64,000 bases of DNA from Stegostoma tigrinum (Eukaryota), in the NCBI RefSeq assembly GCF_030684315.1, contig NC_081389.1:11821048-11885047 (forward strand). The letters are read 5' to 3'. Positions within the stretch are counted from its first letter, which is position 1. Each line of letters starts with the position of its first letter. Positions 29,575-36,989 of this stretch are shown piece by piece. The position numbers were made by a program, and so were the translations under genes. Below the pieces are notes generated by a model, which saw nothing but the letters and a program-made list of their open reading frames with translations, made no database searches and was not told the origin of the DNA.

Positions 29575-30860
29575 GATACAGTGTGGAGCTGGAGGAACAC
29601 AGCAGGCCAGGCAGTATTGAAGGAGCAGGAAAGTCGAAATTTTGGGTTCACACCCTTCATTGGGACTTGGGTGGGGGAAGGGAGGTCAGAAAAAGAGGTA
29701 AGAGGGAAGGGGGTGGGGCTGGGGAAGGGGGGTGGGATAGTGGAAGATGGATGCAGGTATGGGGTTGTGGAGATGGCTAATGGAAAGGATGGATCAGGTG
29801 GGCAAGAAAATGGACAGGTTGTGTTGGGCCAGGGAGGCTGGGATGAGATACAGGGTTGAACGTGAGATGAGGCCAGGAGTGGGGAGATTGGGGCGGAATA
29901 TGAGGTGTTGTTCCTCCAGCTTATGCATGGCATCATTGTCACACTGGAGGAAGCCCAAGGTGGGCATGTCGTCAAGCAAGTGGGAGGGGGAGTTAAAATG
30001 GTTGGGAACCAGAAGGTGCTGTTGCTTATAGTGTACAGAGCACAGATGCTGTGTGAAATGGCCCCCAAGTCTGTGTTTGGTCTTGTTTGATGCAGAGGAG
30101 ACCACGTCGGGAGGATTGGATACAGTAGACCAGGTTGGAGGAAGTACAGGTGAACCCCTGTTAGATGTAGAAAGATTGTTTGGGGCCTTTGATAGAGGTG
30201 AGGAGGGAGGTGTAGGGGCAGGTGTAGCACCTCCTGTGGTTGCAGCGGAAGGTGCCAGGTGTGGTGTGGTGGGGTTGGTGGGGAGCAAACGAGGGATTTG
30301 TGGAGTGCGCGGTCCCTATGGAAGGCAGATAGGGTTGGGGAGGGAAATATCTCTTTAGTTATGGGCTCAAGTTGCAGGTGGCGAAAGTGGCGGAGCATAA
30401 TGCGTTGGATGCCAAGGTTGGTGGGGTGATGTGAGGACAAGGAGGAATTCTGTGTATATTTTTGTTGGTGGGGGAGGGGGGTTTAAGGGCAGAAGTGTGA
30501 GAAACGCAAGAGATGTGGTTGAGGGCATTATGAATCATAGGAGGGGAGAAGTTACAGTCCTTGAAGTATGAGAATATCTGGCATGCCTGGAGGAGGAATA
30601 CTCCATAATCTTGGGAGTAGATGTGGCAGAGAATTGGGAGCATGGGGTCACATTCTTGCAGGAGGGTGGGTGAGAGGAGGTGTCATCTAGGTAGCTGTGG
30701 GAGTCAGACTTGAAATAGATGTCAATTTCGAGGCGGTCACCAGAGATGGAGAGGTCCAGGAAGGAGAGAGAGGTATTGGAGGTGATCCCGGTAAATTTTG
30801 AGGTGAAGGTTGAAGGTGAAAGGTGTCAGTAAAGTTGATGAACTGTTCAAGCTCCTAATG
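29575..30860 (-). mobile_element. Decayed Penelope-like element (RT C-terminal part, GIY-YIG, terminal repeat); left part of the copy interrupted by R2
   Basis: Frameshifted fragments ILRHFRHLQ..FPSP.LSAFHRDR, TKHRLGGHFTQHL and KLEEQHLIFR; terminal arm at about 29575-29660. Homologous to the element at 7.0-8.1 kb. Confidence 0.88.
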
Positions 30861-30878
30861 GGCGGGAGTAACTATGAC
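30861..30878 (+). rRNA. 18-nt fragment of 28S rRNA carried at the R2 5' end (not an rRNA gene)
   Basis: GGCGGGAGTAACTATGAC matches the conserved 28S sequence upstream of the R2 site (GGCGGGAGTAACTATGACTCTCTTAAGG/TAGCCAA). No other rDNA was seen in the window. Confidence 0.88.
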
Positions 30879-30948
30879 ATCTAGTTACAGGTCGGCCACC
30901 TCCTCGTGGTTCCCCCGGAAGCAGGCTGGGCCTGACCAAGAGCCGACC
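30861..30948 (+). ncRNA. HDV-like self-cleaving ribozyme of the R2 5' UTR
   Basis: Hand-folded. P1 GGCGGG 30861-66 / UCCCCC 30911-16 (one C-C mismatch). J1/2 hairpin GUAACUA 30868-74 / UAGUUAC 30882-88. P2 GGUCGGC 30890-96 / GCCGACC 30942-48. P3 ACC/GGU around L3 UCCUCGU 30901-07. P1.1 GG 30917-18. P4 CAGGC/GCCUG 30922-34. J4/2 ACCAAG with putative catalytic C30936. Confidence 0.9.
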
Positions 30949-31021
30949 GACCACGTCTGGGGGGGTTAGCTCCCCCCCCAAGACGTCCCGCTGCTGTGCT
31001 ACGTCACAACAAGACATAGAT

Positions 31022-34000
31022 ATGCCCGAGGCCACTGCCTCGGCACACAGCAGTCAAAGAGGGACCGCGATGTTTGTCTGCGAACATTGTGGTAAGGAGT
31101 ACAGATCTAGATCTGGACTTAGTGGACACAGAAGGATGCACTTTGCAGAGGGTGAGACCAGAGCCGTGCCGATCTGGAAGTGCGACATATGTCAAGCCGC
31201 CTTTGGTACAAAGATCGGACTTTCCCAGCATCAGCGTCGACAACATGCGGAAGTAGACAACCAGAGGAAATTAGAAGGTATGAAAGTGGTGAAGAGAAGA
31301 TGGGAGCCTTACGAGGATGAGCGTATAAGAGATTATACTGCCACCCACTGGAGGCCTGGGATGGATAAGAAGGTTGTCTACCAAGCCCTGGCTGAGCAAT
31401 TAGGACGGTCCTCAGAGGCGGTGCGCGCTAGACTGAGATCCATTGGTTGGCCGGAGGTGGGAGAACGGACCCCGATGGTGGATGTGCCTTCGGACACAAT
31501 AGAGGGACGGCAAATCTCCGTCACACCATCGGGTGAGGAATTAAAGGCAGCAGAACCCTGGGACTATGGAGTAGCCACTGTGGCGCTACAGGACCCGGAG
31601 CTTACCATTCGAGAACGGGATACGACGGAACAAGAACAACCTCTAACGGTGATGACACCTGGTGTAACCCCGGAAAGAGGAGACACTCGAGAAGCCCGCA
31701 CGGAATCTCACGAGAAACATCCTTCAGTAACGTGTGAGGGTTGGCGTAATTGCTTATTGTTAGCGGCTAGCCAACAGCTCCGAGATGCTCACATGGAGGA
31801 GTTTGGATGCCTTCTACTACGGCGATTGATCGAGCGGGTCATCCAAGGGGAGTGTTCGTTGACAGAGGCTAGAAAAATACTGGATGAACATGCCGAGGAA
31901 TATTTGCAGGCGAAATGGATTCCATCAAAGGTTCGTGTAACAGCAGAAACGACTCGAAGATTGAATGCCAAGCAGCGACGACGAAAGGAGTATGCACATG
32001 TCCAAGCTCACTGGGCAAAACGGAGGGGAGACATTGTTAAGACTATCCTCCGTGGGGAGTGGCGGGACATGGTCGCTGCTGGTAAGGGCTGGCCTGAAGG
32101 TACATTTCAGTATTGGGAGGGTCTCTTGTCACGCGAGCCCAAAAAGGATGACAGGCCGATTCGGAAAATCCTGGAAGAACGTTGGGATTTAGTCGCTCCA
32201 TGTGAGGTAGAGGATGTGAAGAAAGCCATAACGGCTTCTAAGGGTACAGCACCAGGTGTTGATAGGATATCAGCCGAGCAGATGGCAGCAGCAGACGTAA
32301 ATGTGTGGGCTGCATATTTCAACATTATTATCGCTCTGGAGTATGTCCCGAAGAGGCTTCGCGTTTCCCGGATAACATTGGTCCCGAAGTCAGAGGGAAA
32401 AATCGAACATCCCTCAAACTTGAGGCCGATAAATGTAACGTCGGTGGTGCTCCGGGTCCTTCATAAGATCCTGGCTGAGAGATGGATGAACTGTTTGAAT
32501 TTGCCATCATTTCAATTCGGTTTCTTACGAACGGACGGTACATACGAAGCTACACAGTTGGTATCGGCAATATTGCGTGAAGCCCGAGCAAGATTCGACA
32601 ATCTATCTTGTGCTTTCGTCGATCTCTCGAAAGCATTTGATCTGGTCGCCCATGATACGATTCTCAGATCGGCGGCGGGATTCGGAGCACCTCCCCCACT
32701 GGTGACTCTGTTGAAGAGTGGCCTTGAAGAGGCAGAAGCCCTTTTGGGTAGCTCTACGATAAGAGCTGGTAGAGGGGTGAGGCAAGGGGATCCGCTATCT
32801 CCGTTGCTATTCATTATGGCAATGGATGAGGTGATCGAATTGGCCGACCGCAGCATAGGTTACCAATTTGTGGGAGAGAAGGTGGATGTGGTTGCCTACG
32901 CAGACGATCTGATGGTGATGGCTGAGAACGAACAACGGTTGCGGGAAAAATTATCCAAGCTGTCAACATCTTTGGATATGGCCGGAATGACGATCAATCC
33001 GGGAAAATCAAGAACTCTCTCGATCGTTGGTTCGAAAAAGAACAAAAAGGTAGCTGTCAAAGAAATGAATATCAAGGTACAGGGTATGGACATTCCATCA
33101 ATGGGTCCAACTGACCAGATCAAATATCTTGGAATCCAGTTAAACTGGAAGGGACGAGCGCCAATACCACACAAGAAGATTCTCAGTGATATGCTTCGGG
33201 AGGTTACTCGGGCCCCCTTGAAACCACAGCAAAGGGTGGAAATCGTCCGTTCCTATTTGATACCGAAGATGAAATATACCCTTACTTTGGGTGAGGCCCA
33301 TAGGAATACCTTAAAGGCTCTAGATCGGCAAATCAGACAGTCAGTTAGAACTTGGCTTCGTCTCCCGAAGGATGCCCCCATTGGGTTTATACATTCTTCC
33401 CTAAGAGATGGGGGACTCGGGATTTCATCACTTTCATCAATAATCCCGATTGAGAAGGGGAGGCGAATGGAGCGTCTCTTGGCCAAGGACATACCCTGGA
33501 TCCGGGCGTTAGTGACACTGAGATCCTTCCAGCCAGTATGTAGAGAGATGATTAGACCGGGCAAGGTTGGAGGAGTGGAGGTTTCCACAGTAGAAGAGGT
33601 TAAAGAAGAATGGAAGAAACGTCTAGTGTCCCACGCGGATTGCAAGATCTTACAGGGTGTGAGGGTAGATCAAGTATCCCATAGATGGTTGCAGAATAAT
33701 GAGAGGATGTTCCCGAGACTCTTCATAAGAGCAACTCAATTAAGAACAGGCTCGCTTTCGACGAAAGTTCGAAGATCTCGGGGAGCTCGTGCCCAGGGTG
33801 ACTGTAAATGCCGTGGGAACTGTGGCAGTCCGGAGACTCTCCATCATATATTGCAGAGCTGTGAGATAACTCATGACGCGCGCTGTGCACGACATAATCG
33901 TGTAATGAAACAACTTGTACGTCAGATGCGGCGATTGAAGGATGTGGAGGTAATTATGGAGCCGAGAATACCATTGAGAGTCTCGTTCTGCAAACCAGAC

Positions 34001-34336
34001 ATCATTATGATGGAGGGTGAGACTGCTTATATCTGCGATGTTGCGGTGCCACTGGAATCACGACTGGAAGAGTCATGGAAGATGAAGATCGCGAAATATG
34101 GAAGTGATGAAGTTGTAACCGCAACTCTTAGATATTTGACAGCGACTGGCCACAGGATCTCAACAATCAAGCAAACTCCGGTGATAATATCATGCCGTGG
34201 ACTCATCTACGACAAAAGCGCAAACATTCTCCAGAGGCTCGGCATCTCCAAAATTTCGATCGGAGACCTGGTTACAACAACTATGGCAGGAAGTCTCAAT
34301 TGTTATGATATGTATATGCGCGGTGCATGTGGGTAG
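31022..34336 (+). CDS. R2 retrotransposon protein (2x C2H2 zinc finger, Myb, reverse transcriptase, CCHC knuckle, restriction-like endonuclease), 1104 aa
   Basis: Zinc fingers CEHC..HRRMH and CDIC..HQRRQH; Myb-like KRRWEPYEDERI. RT motifs APGVD, LRPINV, QFGF, FVDLSKAFDLVAH, GVRQGDPLSPLLF, AYADDL and KYLG. R2-typical APLKPQQR and GGLG. Knuckle CRGNCGSPETLHHILQSC, then RHN and endonuclease KPDII..CDV..K.AKY. No stops or frameshifts. Confidence 0.96.
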   Translation: MPEATASAHSSQRGTAMFVCEHCGKEYRSRSGLSGHRRMHFAEGETRAVPIWKCDICQAAFGTKIGLSQHQRRQHAEVDNQRKLEGMKVVKRRWEPYEDERIRDYTATHWRPGMDKKVVYQALAEQLGRSSEAVRARLRSIGWPEVGERTPMVDVPSDTIEGRQISVTPSGEELKAAEPWDYGVATVALQDPELTIRERDTTEQEQPLTVMTPGVTPERGDTREARTESHEKHPSVTCEGWRNCLLLAASQQLRDAHMEEFGCLLLRRLIERVIQGECSLTEARKILDEHAEEYLQAKWIPSKVRVTAETTRRLNAKQRRRKEYAHVQAHWAKRRGDIVKTILRGEWRDMVAAGKGWPEGTFQYWEGLLSREPKKDDRPIRKILEERWDLVAPCEVEDVKKAITASKGTAPGVDRISAEQMAAADVNVWAAYFNIIIALEYVPKRLRVSRITLVPKSEGKIEHPSNLRPINVTSVVLRVLHKILAERWMNCLNLPSFQFGFLRTDGTYEATQLVSAILREARARFDNLSCAFVDLSKAFDLVAHDTILRSAAGFGAPPPLVTLLKSGLEEAEALLGSSTIRAGRGVRQGDPLSPLLFIMAMDEVIELADRSIGYQFVGEKVDVVAYADDLMVMAENEQRLREKLSKLSTSLDMAGMTINPGKSRTLSIVGSKKNKKVAVKEMNIKVQGMDIPSMGPTDQIKYLGIQLNWKGRAPIPHKKILSDMLREVTRAPLKPQQRVEIVRSYLIPKMKYTLTLGEAHRNTLKALDRQIRQSVRTWLRLPKDAPIGFIHSSLRDGGLGISSLSSIIPIEKGRRMERLLAKDIPWIRALVTLRSFQPVCREMIRPGKVGGVEVSTVEEVKEEWKKRLVSHADCKILQGVRVDQVSHRWLQNNERMFPRLFIRATQLRTGSLSTKVRRSRGARAQGDCKCRGNCGSPETLHHILQSCEITHDARCARHNRVMKQLVRQMRRLKDVEVIMEPRIPLRVSFCKPDIIMMEGETAYICDVAVPLESRLEESWKMKIAKYGSDEVVTATLRYLTATGHRISTIKQTPVIISCRGLIYDKSANILQRLGISKISIGDLVTTTMAGSLNCYDMYMRGACG

Positions 34337-34504
34337 AATAATGTTCAATAAAAGTCCCGAAATGATCTGTGCCCCTTATATTTCGCAGAAAACACTTATG
34401 ATGAGCTAATCGCCTGACCTCGCGTCCCTCGGCGACAATAGCACTTTAGTGCAGTTTTTAGGGATTGGGTACCACCACTGTGTGTCCCAACCAAATACAT
34501 GTTA

Positions 34505-34551
34505 TAGCACTGGTCAACGTAGTGAAAGAAGAAGTGAGGGATGGTGCCAGT
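34505..34551 (-). mobile_element. Continuation of the Penelope RT (YIDD-motif region) on the other side of the R2 insertion
   Basis: The - strand reads GTIPHFFFHYVD, resembling the Penelope RT segment P.LFLRYIDD that normally precedes EEL/VEQFINF, which is seen at about 30830-30860. Confidence 0.7.
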
Positions 34552-36129
34552 TGAAGATTGTGATTCTGTGCATTTCAAACTCAACCTCATTGTGAACAGT
34601 TTGGAGTGCATCTCGGTGGGCATTTAGTGTTGGAGTAACAAGCTATCGTTGCACTGCCAATATCTCAGACTGTCTTTTTTTGCCACGTGGTAGCATTAAG
34701 GATTGCAGTACCAAAGCCCTAATCAAATTCAAGAACTGTGAGAAACTGGAAGGGTTAAATGTCTGAATTTTCCCCAAGTTTGTGGGAGATCTTGTAATGA
34801 AACCACTCATGTGACACCCAACTGGAGAGATCATTCACCCAATCGTCTGTCAGTAACAATATCCAAGAGCTACTAGGTGAGCGATGGTGAGTGTCTTTCC
34901 CTCTCGTTGGCCTTGATACAGCTGGCCGTCCAATGGAAGGCTAATGCCTTCTGTGTCCTAAAGCCCACTAGGCAAGACCTTCTTGCCACTGGAGTCTATT
35001 GTTTAAAGCCACCCCCTTACCAGCCATCTGTGCCTCTGATTGCCCCAGATGGAGATGGTGAGTCAAGGTTCTTGTGTGGCCATTAATTGACCACATAAGG
35101 ATCTTTCCCACTCTTGACAAGTTGACGAAGTTGCCCATGGATCTTCCTGCCTACCACTTAGTTCGTGAGGTAGCACGAAATGGATGAGTTTATCTCCAGT
35201 GCTAAGTCACCCAAATATTGCCCCCTCTTGCCAACTCCCAGGAGGGAGCACTTACTCCGTGTTCCTGTGCTCTCAAAGGGCCAAACATTTGTCTACCAGT
35301 AAGAACAAGAGGCCCTTTTCTGTTACAGGAATGTATCCTGTGGAAAATGTACCTTAGCCAACGTTGCTTTTAAATAGAAAACAAAATTGTGATCTAGTTT
35401 CTTGTAACTTGTGTAAGCTGTTGTTGCTGTTCTTGCTGGTTGGAGATTGGGAGGATAAAGGTGAGCTTGAGAACTCTTAAAATAAGGTAATCAGGAGGGA
35501 CTGAAATATAATGAGCAGAGAGGAAGCCTCACATGTTGGTGCCAAGGGAGCAGGCAGGGGTCACAGAGTGGCGATAGATAATCTCCCTAACAATCCACTA
35601 TCCTGCCACTCTAGAAAGTCGGACAGATCACTGTTGTCCATGGAAATGGAGAGGAGGAGGAGGAGGGGTATGGGTGGATTAAAAGAAATGATTTGTTCGA
35701 ATTGTGTGGAAACTAAAAAACCATTTGCCCACTTTCAGCCACTATGGATGGCTGACTGACTAAATTAATAATGAGCTATTTATTTAATTATTCATATCTT
35801 CTCTTTGGAATTGCCAGTTGTGGGATATGGTGAGTTAAGGAACAGTTATAATTAAGATGACATAATAGTGGTCATTAAAAGAATTGACAGCACAGACGAA
35901 AGCTACATGTGTGTTGTTTATGCTCTAAATGAGCCTTCACCCCTACTGCCATTAACATTAACTCTGATTTATCTCTATACAGATGCTGCCAGACCTGCTA
36001 AGTTTCTCCCAGCAATTTCCTTTTCTTGATCTCTAATTTCCTGCAGCTGCAGTTCTTTGTTTTTATTTACGTACCACCTGTTTGGCCATGATTTTGTCTG
36101 CTTATTCTAATGTTTAAAGGTGGAGTCCA

Positions 36130-36450: not shown

Positions 36451-36583
36451 TTTAAAAAAAAATCTAAATGGGGCTCTTAAAAATCAATATCTCTCTTCTT
36501 CCCTTTCTCCCACTAATCCTTTAAATGTGTGTGCATGCAAAGTCTGACAGAATTCTCATTTTGTTTTTTTTTTACATTCCCAG

Positions 36584-36925
36584 GGGTCTTCAAGATCCAA
36601 GTACCAGAAGTTCCTGTCGTTGCCATCTTTGGGAAAGATATCACCCTGAACTGCTCCTTCATCACCAATGCCACCTTTTCCTTGGGCGACCTCACTGTCA
36701 TTTGGCAGCTTACAGAGACTCGGAAGATGGTGCGCAACTACCCGATCCAGCAGGACCAGCTGGCAGACAGCTTTGCGAACAGGACAGCTCTGTTCACTGA
36801 AGAGCTGGAAAAGGGGAATGCTTCTTTGCTGTTGAGGCATGTCCGGATTGAGGACGAGGGCAGCTTCACCTGCTTTGTGAGAATTAAAAGTCACCAGAGT
36901 GCTTCCATCATGCTCCGACTGGCTG
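36584..36925 (+). CDS. CD276: CD276 (B7-H3) IgV-domain exon
   Basis: Polypyrimidine tract and AG at 36582-83, GT donor at 36926, phase 1/1. Translation VFKIQVPEVPVVA..LNCSF..IWQLTET..FANRTALF..GNASLLL..VRIEDEGSFTCFV closely parallels the mammalian B7-H3 IgV as I recall it. Confidence 0.93.
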
Positions 36926-36989
36926 GTATGAGGACGTGAGATTGTGCCCAGAGCAGTGGCTCCCAGTCTTATATTACTTACACTGAAGC

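What the first reader, a model, noticed from the sequence alone, without database searches (positions are those of the whole stretch)
30861..30948. Complete HDV-like ribozyme whose P1 strand is captured 28S rRNA; the insert starts at the predicted self-cleavage site
Seen: P1, P1.1, P2, P3 and P4 can all be drawn, with the hallmark ACCUCCUCGUGG L3 and an ACCAAG J4/2. The first inserted base, G30861, is the ribozyme +1 position and corresponds to 28 nt upstream of the canonical AAGG/TAGC site. Established: many R2 ribozymes cleave within upstream 28S co-transcript sequence and use it as P1. Inference: the copy was reverse-transcribed to the very end of a self-cleaved RNA, so it carries a self-sufficient ribozyme that no longer needs an rDNA context. 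A C-C mismatch in P1 (30863/30914) may slow cleavage.
Basis: partly seen in the sequence, partly recalled or inferred. Interest (0 to 1): 0.85.

Follow-up and report, generated by a model that had tools for sequence, protein, structure and literature searches.

The report
Shark R2 retrotransposon's HDV-like ribozyme
The 88 bases are the ordinary self-cleaving (HDV-like) ribozyme at the front of an R2 jumping gene already catalogued from the zebra shark; here it sits in an intact stray copy outside the ribosomal genes whose front end falls within two or three bases of the predicted cut site.

Summary
The fold is real. All five helices can be drawn at the stated coordinates with the exact hallmark CCUCCUCGUGG. 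A descriptor scan found this as the only such site in the window and none in shuffled sequence.

It is the known "-28" class of R2 ribozyme, whose P1 5' strand is 28S rRNA (Eickbush 2013). Bases 30883-31032 are letter-identical to R2-2_STig, a 28S-flanked R2 of the zebra shark published in 2026. So the imperfect P1 (a C-C mismatch, or a bulged C) is shared with that 28S-flanked copy, not private to this one.

The window holds no rDNA. The element interrupts a very high-copy repeat, and uninterrupted copies of that repeat read ...GGG|AGCAC.... G30860-62 could therefore be target, and the insert's first base is fixed only to 30860-30863.

The reading "full-length cDNA of a self-cleaved RNA" is well supported but is an expected consequence of known biology. 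The 28S leader runs -28..-11, then an extra A, then TCT (-10..-8): seven bases are missing, not ten.

Activity was not tested. Earlier scan notes list other stray R2 copies in this genome; none describes this ribozyme on other DNA.

The parts
30861..30878 (+). 28S rRNA-derived leader (-28..-11 of the R2 site). 30861-30866/67 is the P1 5' strand, with predicted cleavage 5' of G30861.
   Evidence: Exact and unique match. The same 28S stretch is seen in locus L001 and in the shark 28S flanks of Table S2. The -28 class is described in PMC3774820.
30879..30882 (+). Junction ATCT: an extra A, then TCT that fits 28S -10..-8. 28S -7..-1 (CTTAAGG) is absent.
   Evidence: Read from the sequence. The published R2-2_STig element column starts at AGTTACAGG = 30883. 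An X2 contig shares CTATGACATCT without a gap.
30868..30888 (+). J1/2 hairpin, 7 bp: 28S-derived GUAACUA pairs with element-side UAGUUAC; the loop is UGACAUC.
   Evidence: Analogous leader/element hairpins occur in L001 and in the ghostshark R2-1_CMi.
30890..30896 (+). P2 5' strand (GGUCGGC).
   Evidence: Seven Watson-Crick pairs with 30942-30948; present in the minimum-free-energy fold.
30898..30910 (+). P3 (ACC/GGU) enclosing L3 UCCUCGU. This contains the hallmark CCUCCUCGUGG (30899-30909) and the two Cs of P1.1.
   Evidence: The motif is named as the most conserved R2 ribozyme sequence in PMC5035012, and it occurs 88 times in Table S2 of PMC13188248.
30911..30916 (+). P1 3' strand UCCCCC. 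C30914 faces C30863 as a mismatch, or C30863 bulges out.
   Evidence: The identical sequence is present in the 28S-flanked R2-2_STig.
30917..30918 (+). P1.1 3' strand (GG).
   Evidence: Pairs with C30903 and C30902.
30922..30934 (+). P4 minimal hairpin: CAGGC, loop UGG, GCCUG.
30935..30941 (+). J4/2 ACCAAGA, holding the candidate catalytic C (30936 or 30937).
   Evidence: by analogy with HDV C75-G-A-A and with GCUAA in L001. Which C is catalytic is undecided.
30942..30948 (+). P2 3' strand (GCCGACC); the 3' end of the ribozyme.
31022..34336 (+). Intact R2 ORF of 1104 aa: two C2H2 fingers, a Myb-like region, reverse transcriptase, and a C-terminal endonuclease region.
   Evidence: The protein matches R2-2_STig.
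34337..34505 (+). R2 3' UTR. The element ends ...GTTAT and the target repeat resumes at AGCAC (34506).
   Evidence: Joints 30856->34528 and the loose ends from uninterrupted repeat copies.

Best explanation
Bases 30861-30948 are the 5' HDV-like self-cleaving ribozyme of the R2 family published as R2-2_STig (zebra shark, Stegostoma tigrinum). It belongs to the common '-28' class. The P1 5' strand is 28S rRNA (GGCGGG, -28..-23), and the other helices lie downstream; the J1/2 hairpin also draws on the 28S leader.

How it works in rDNA (established for the class, inferred here): the 28S/R2 co-transcript cuts itself 28 nt upstream of the insertion site. That leaves R2 RNA with a 28S leader folded into the ribozyme.

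How this copy arose (inferred): such a processed RNA was reverse-transcribed to its 5' end at a non-rDNA site, GGG|AGCAC inside a high-copy repeat. The new copy therefore kept the leader and every part of the ribozyme. Both junctions overlap short matches between the target and the RNA's 28S-derived ends: GG at the 5' side and AGC at the 3' side.

P1 is imperfect, with a C-C mismatch or a bulged C30863 and about 4.4 kcal/mol less stability than a perfect P1. This is shared with the rDNA copy, so cleavage is probably slow in vitro yet evidently compatible with recent transposition.
For: - Fold and motif: every helix is present, and the site is unique against shuffled sequence.
- 28S leader: exact 18-nt match.
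- Class: -28 is the most frequent R2 cleavage site, with P1 made of 28S; tandem 28S duplications at 5' junctions have lengths that match the cleavage site (PMC3774820). Designed Rz-28 ribozymes carrying 14-32 nt of rRNA all cleave (PMC11331408).
- Family: six 30-mers covering 30883-31032 and 31200-29 are each found once in the R2-2_STig row. That row has 28S sequence upstream and TAGCCAAATGCC downstream.
- Recent and intact: a 1104-aa ORF, and contigs of run X1 that differ at 0-5 positions.
- Ectopic: no rRNA in the window, and uninterrupted copies of the flanking repeat skip 30856->34528.
- Comparators: ghostshark R2-1_CMi has P1' UCCCGCU, a perfect partner for GGCGGGA. L001 is an R2 in 28S with the same L3 but different P2 and P1 sequences.
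Against: - No cleavage assay, and no RNA reads that show a 5' end.
- No formal covariation test.
- P1 is imperfect. Comparable P1 mismatches abolished in vitro cleavage in horseshoe crab R2 and in an Anopheles ribozyme.
- J4/2 is 7 nt, with two extra bases before P2.
- No Rfam hit, although the control shows this is uninformative.
- The 5' boundary is ambiguous by 2-3 nt because the target ends in GGG.
- The immediate 28S/R2 junction of the rDNA copy could not be read, because the table cell is cut.
- Two contigs from the same species diverge from the window at 30872 and 30921 and remain unexplained.
Confidence: 0.8

Rival explanations
1. The fold is a relic that no longer cleaves in this family. 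R2-2_STig RNA 5' ends are made another way, for example by rRNA processing nucleases or RT stalling at the folded 5' structure, and the insert's start near -28 reflects that instead.
For: P1 carries a C-C mismatch or bulge in both the ectopic and the rDNA copy. Similar P1 defects gave no in vitro cleavage. The minimum-free-energy fold of the 88 nt is no more stable than shuffles, z = -0.3.
Against: All catalytic-core features are intact and the family is recently active. The insert's start within 2-3 nt of the geometric cleavage site is hard to get by chance. Silkmoth R2 is active in vivo with about 1% in vitro cleavage.
Confidence: 0.1
2. The ribozyme is active but uses another P1 register. 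One option is GGGAG (30864-68) with UUCCC (30910-14), cutting at -25. Another, in this ectopic copy only, is GGG(C)GGGA starting at the flanking G30860, cutting one base upstream.
For: The C5 run allows slippage: the descriptor accepts starts at 30860, 30861 and 30862. L001 uses a -25 register, GGGAGUA/UACUCCU. Cleavage shifts of one to three bases between lineages are documented.
Against: A -25 register leaves two unpaired Cs between P1' and P1.1, which breaks the usual stacking. The insert retains -28..-26 (or at least -26), which a -25 cut would have removed.
Confidence: 0.07
3. The copy reached this place as DNA, by recombination or segmental transfer of an rDNA fragment carrying an R2, rather than by retrotransposition of processed RNA.
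For: 28S sequence abuts the element's 5' end.
Against: Only 18-21 nt of 28S are present, ending at the ribozyme +1 position. There is no 28S at the 3' side. Uninterrupted repeat copies show a clean insertion between GGG and AGCAC.
Confidence: 0.03

Closest known systems
R2 '-28' HDV-like ribozymes (Eickbush, Burke & Eickbush 2013, PMC3774820; Rz-28 of PMC11331408)
   Same: Sits at the 5' end of R2. The P1 5' strand is 28S -28..-23. It has the CCUCCUCGUGG core, a P1.1 GG, a variable P4, a C in J4/2, and 28S sequence in J1/2.
   Different: P1' is UCCCCC instead of the usual CCCGCU, which gives a C-C mismatch or a bulged C. J4/2 is two bases longer. Only 21 of the 28 leader bases are present, plus one extra A. 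This copy is not in rDNA.
R2-2_STig, Stegostoma tigrinum (Table S2 of PMC13188248, Genome Biol 2026)
   Same: Sequence is identical from 30883 through at least 31032, and again at 31200-29. The protein is the same apart from one seen difference (L/V), and it has the same two-zinc-finger N-terminus.
   Different: The published copy is flanked by 28S on both sides. That paper does not analyse the ribozyme and reports no ectopic copies of this family.
Genomic HDV ribozyme
   Same: Nested double-pseudoknot topology, G at +1, L3 CCUCCUCG, P1.1 made of two C-G pairs, and a C-N-A-A motif in J4/2.
   Different: L3 is one base shorter. P1 closes with G-C rather than G.U. P4 is minimal (5 bp). A structured 22-nt J1/2 is present. 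P1 is imperfect.
Horseshoe crab R2 ribozyme (PMC3774820)
   Same: A -28 ribozyme with a one-position P1 defect that is shared by all copies of an apparently active element.
   Different: A different lineage and a different position of the defect. In the crab a compensating change gave only 9% cleavage; nothing has been measured here.

Membership tests
HDV-like self-cleaving ribozyme | Nested double pseudoknot: P1, P1.1, P2, P3 and P4 in the canonical order | tested here: met
   All helices are present. It is the only site in the window, with 0 of 60 and 0 of 3000 shuffles matching.
HDV-like self-cleaving ribozyme | Conserved L3 (two Cs for P1.1; the G and U of the reverse wobble) and G at +1 | tested here: met
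   L3 is UCCUCGU at 30901-07 and G30861 is at +1. The CCUCCUCGUGG motif is named.
HDV-like self-cleaving ribozyme | Catalytic cytosine in J4/2 | tested here: inconclusive
   ACCAAGA offers C30936 and C30937, and the spacing to P2 is atypical.
HDV-like self-cleaving ribozyme | Uninterrupted P1 of 6-7 bp | tested here: not met
   C30863 faces C30914 or bulges out. The duplex is -5.4 against -9.8 kcal/mol for a perfect P1.
HDV-like self-cleaving ribozyme | Mg2+-dependent self-cleavage 5' of +1 | not testable with these tools
   Needs an in vitro transcription and cleavage assay.
HDV-like self-cleaving ribozyme | Match to an Rfam HDV-type covariance model | tested here: inconclusive
   No hit at gathering score or at E<=10. 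The control, a genuine 28S/R2 junction in L001, also gives none.
R2 -28 ribozyme class | P1 5' strand is 28S starting 28 nt upstream of AAGG|TAGC | tested here: met
   30861-78 is identical to 28S -28..-11.
R2 -28 ribozyme class | Lies at the 5' end of an R2 element (RT plus C2H2/Myb N-terminus) | tested here: met
   ORF 31022-34336; the best relatives are R2-type proteins.
R2 -28 ribozyme class | Embedded in 28S rDNA and made as a co-transcript | tested here: not met
   This copy is not: there is no rRNA in the window. The family is: R2-2_STig is flanked by 28S.
R2 -28 ribozyme class | Helices kept by compensatory change among relatives | tested here: inconclusive
   Only comparisons by eye were possible. 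P2, P1' and the J1/2 hairpin differ in sequence but keep their pairing in L001 and R2-1_CMi. No alignment-based test could be run.
R2-2_STig family | Near-identity of nucleotide and protein sequence | tested here: met
   Six of six 30-mers and a 16-aa peptide were found in that row.

The most novel reading that the evidence does not exclude
Because the -28 ribozyme carries its own 28S-derived P1 strand, every full-length copy is processable from any host transcript. In this shark that portability may have let R2 lineages establish intact, potentially expressed copies outside rDNA: earlier scan notes list several ectopic R2s. This copy lies in the same orientation as an Ig V-set exon about 1.6 kb downstream (2 kb from the element's end), so it could cut that gene's pre-mRNA. 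It may mark an early step towards loss of rDNA specificity.
Probability: 0.15. Interest if true: 0.55.

Novelty: new member of a known kind. Interest (0 to 1): 0.3.

Why it matters
The ribozyme itself is textbook R2 biology, and the element family is already published. What this copy adds is modest.

First, an insertion outside rDNA keeps the RNA's true 5' end, because no 28S target is there for it to anneal to. It therefore acts as a natural record that a vertebrate R2 RNA begins at or within 2-3 nt of -28 in vivo.

Second, it shows that a P1 with a mismatch or bulge is tolerated by a recently active family. That echoes the unexplained horseshoe-crab case.

Third, it documents that an intact R2 can land outside rDNA at a site sharing only 2-3 nt with the RNA's 28S-derived ends. 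This bears on off-target risk in R2-based gene insertion.

Tried and rejected
- The search for homologous proteins gave only three distant hits.
- The exhaustive protein search gave R2 relatives at 41% identity or less, plus one 64% fragment. Without their DNA these were of no use for the ribozyme.
- A pattern scan (28S leader, a gap, then CCTCCTCG) found one metagenome contig, L001. It found nothing in genome contigs or viral contigs.
- Rfam gave no HDV-type hit, but the control shows this is uninformative.
- Minimum-free-energy folding cannot represent the pseudoknot, and its z-score is uninformative.
- All four runs laid were contigs, none on record as RNA, so they show neither RNA 5' ends nor expression.
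- The upstream 28S cell of the R2-2_STig row is cut at 400 characters and the preprint holds no supplement. The rDNA junction itself stayed unread.
- The bacterial promoter/terminator scan is irrelevant here and found nothing.

Full report
[quoted passage not shown] The match is unique in the window and never arose in shuffles. The same 28S stretch is seen upstream of an R2 in metagenome locus L001 and in shark 28S flanks.

- P1: 30861-66 with 30911-16, where C30863 faces C30914.
- J1/2 hairpin: 7 bp, 30868-74 with 30882-88.
- P2: 7 bp, 30890-96 with 30942-48.
- P3: ACC/GGU around L3 UCCUCGU.
- P1.1: C30902-G30918 and C30903-G30917.
- P4: 5 bp, 30922-26 with 30930-34.
- J4/2: ACCAAGA.

The string CCUCCUCGUGG (30899-30909) is the sequence Kojima et al. 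single out as the most conserved part of R2 ribozymes (PMC5035012). It occurs 88 times in the 5' ends listed in Table S2 of PMC13188248.

**More than chance?** I wrote a descriptor requiring P3, L3 with CC and G, a following GG, a P4, CNAA, a 6-bp P2 and a 6-bp P1 with at most one mismatch. It hits only this locus on either strand of the 64-kb window. It hit none of 60 dinucleotide shuffles of the window and none of 3000 local shuffles.

Rfam gives no HDV-type hit at gathering score or at E<=10. As a control, the genuine 28S/R2 junction in L001 also gives none. The negative result therefore says nothing. Minimum-free-energy folding recovers the J1/2 hairpin and P2 but cannot represent the pseudoknot.

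**What it belongs to.** Downstream lies an intact 1104-aa ORF (31022-34336) with two C2H2 fingers, a Myb-like stretch and a reverse transcriptase. The reading frame is open from 30878, that is, through the ribozyme.

Table S2 of PMC13188248 (Genome Biol 2026) lists R2-2_STig from the zebra shark, Stegostoma tigrinum, assembly sSteTig4.hap2. Its protein begins VTGRPPPRGSPG... and matches the window, with one visible L/V difference. Its nucleotide column begins AGTTACAGGTCGG..., which is window 30883. Six 30-mers taken from the window (30883-31032 contiguous, plus 31200-29) are each present exactly once in that row. The row has 28S sequence upstream and TAGCCAAATGCC... downstream, so it is an rDNA copy.

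The window is thus most likely zebra shark or a very close relative (inference). The ribozyme from 30883 on, including P1' UUCCCCC, is identical in a 28S-embedded copy. The C-C mismatch is therefore shared with that copy rather than a mutation private to this one, which points to a family trait.

**Known biology.** Eickbush, Burke and Eickbush (PMC3774820) showed the following:
- R2 ribozymes in most lineages use upstream 28S as the P1 5' strand, and -28 is the commonest cleavage site.
- Junction variants, such as a uniform 7-bp 28S deletion in springtail, are copied into the RNA and propagated.
- Some rDNA copies carry tandem 28S duplications whose length equals the cleavage distance. That is the signature of integration at the very 5' end of a processed RNA without annealing to the target.
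- P1 mismatches (horseshoe crab R2, and a C-C mismatch in an Anopheles funestus ribozyme) go with absent in vitro cleavage.

Designed Rz-28 ribozymes carrying 14-32 nt of rRNA all cleave (PMC11331408). The 'capture' is the normal architecture of the class.

**The leader and junction.** After 28S -11 (C30878) come an extra A (30879) and TCT (30880-82), which fits 28S -10..-8. Then comes the element as delimited by the published row. Seven 28S bases (CTTAAGG) are missing rather than ten. A contig of run X2 shares CTATGACATCT without a gap, so this junction variant is probably inherited rather than private.

The J1/2 hairpin pairs the 28S leader (GUAACUA) with element sequence (UAGUUAC). Analogous leader/element hairpins, in other registers, occur elsewhere: CUAUGAC/GUCAUAG in L001, ACUAUGACUC/GAGUCAUAGU in ghostshark R2-1_CMi, and in further Table S2 entries. 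The structure recurs while the sequence differs. That is soft, by-eye support for the fold.

**Ectopic position and boundaries.** No rRNA is detected anywhere in the window, and there is no 28S 3' half. Laying contigs of four runs (two of the window's species, two of a relative) shows that 30300-30860 and 34519-34900 belong to a very high-copy repeat.

Copies of that repeat without the insert join 30856 to 34528. Loose ends read ...AATG|AGAGCAC......AATGGG|AGCATGAGG... and ...CGAGGG AGCACAAGG.... The insertion therefore lies between GGG and AGCAC, and the element ends ...GTTAT at 34505.

Because the target ends in GGG and the RNA begins GG, the first inserted base can only be placed at 30860-30863. 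At the 3' side, TAGC (34505-08) equals the first four bases of downstream 28S, while the empty site supplies only AGC. Both junctions thus sit on 2-3 nt of identity between the target and the 28S-derived ends of the RNA. I read this as microhomology-assisted priming (inference).

An uncleaved co-transcript would be expected to give a 5' end anywhere in 28S. A boundary within 2-3 nt of -28 therefore supports cleavage at or near -28 in vivo.

**P1.** In the mismatch register the pairs are G61-C16, G62-C15, C63xC14, G64-C13, G65-C12 and G66.U11. ViennaRNA prefers a different arrangement in which C63 bulges out and G64-66 pair with C14-12. That gives -5.4 kcal/mol, against -9.8 with a G at 30914.

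The usual vertebrate P1' is CCCGCU, as in ghostshark and in the entries shown, and it pairs perfectly. UUCCCCC occurs only three times in the table: here and in two bamboo-shark R2-1 elements. One of those has GGGGGGA at its junction, a perfect partner. Whether the shark ribozyme is slow or needs high Mg2+ is untested.

**Context.** An Ig V-set exon lies on the same strand at 36529-36939. Read-through transcription from a host gene could supply the RNA, but this is inference only.

**Limits.**
- All runs laid were contigs, none on record as RNA.
- The upstream 28S cell of the R2-2_STig row is cut.
- Two contigs diverge from the window at 30872 (X2) and 30921 (X1) and remain unexplained.

**Verdict.** This is a genuine, class-typical R2 HDV-like ribozyme in a published family, so it is a new member of a known kind. 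The ectopic, intact copy with its 5' end at about -28, and the family-wide imperfect P1, are the only points of modest interest.

Noticed in passing
window 30953-30987: A strong hairpin lies five bases after the ribozyme and about 35 nt before the first ATG: ACGUCUGGGGGGG, loop UUAGCU, CCCCCCCCAAGACGU. It is identical in the published R2-2_STig. It might insulate the ribozyme fold or affect translation initiation.
   Followed up: partly
window 30878-31021: The ORF frame is open upstream of the first ATG, right through the ribozyme. The published protein for R2-2_STig starts VTGRPPPRG, i.e. within P2/P3.
   Followed up: partly
window 30300-30860 and 34506-34900: The flanks are a very high-copy repeat in the window's species and in a relative (summed contig depth up to 10^5). 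Many uninterrupted copies read ...GGG AGCAC....
   Followed up: partly
window 30872 and 30921: One X2 contig fits 30872-31182 (5 differences) but has 29 further upstream letters unlike the window. One X1 contig fits 30921-31428 exactly but has 20 upstream letters unlike it. These may be other copies that are 5'-truncated or have different junctions. Their letters could not be seen.
   Followed up: no
window 36529-36939 (+): An ORF with an immunoglobulin V-set domain (E = 8.6e-07) lies on the same strand as the R2, beginning about 2 kb beyond the element's 3' end. The R2 may sit in an intron in sense orientation.
   Followed up: partly
Table S2 of PMC13188248 (bamboo sharks R2-1_CPl and R2-1_CPu): These three-finger R2s share GGTCG..ACCTCC[T/A]CGTGGTTCCCCC..CGACC with the two-finger R2-2_STig. 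R2-1_CPu has GGGGGGA at its junction, a perfect partner for UUCCCCC. This suggests either exchange of ribozyme modules between co-resident R2 lineages or a cleavage-site shift.
   Followed up: no
L001 3711-3870 (-): A metagenome contig (ERZ501033) holds an R2 in 28S with a 1165-aa ORF. Its ribozyme uses P1 GGGAGUA/UACUCCU (cut at -25, G.U first pair), the same L3, P2 GGUGAC/GUCACC, a roughly 90-nt P4 region and J4/2 GCUAA.
   Followed up: partly
window 34505-34508: TAGC at the 3' junction equals the first four bases of downstream 28S, but uninterrupted repeat copies supply only AGC. The T may come from a 28S tail on the RNA template.
   Followed up: no
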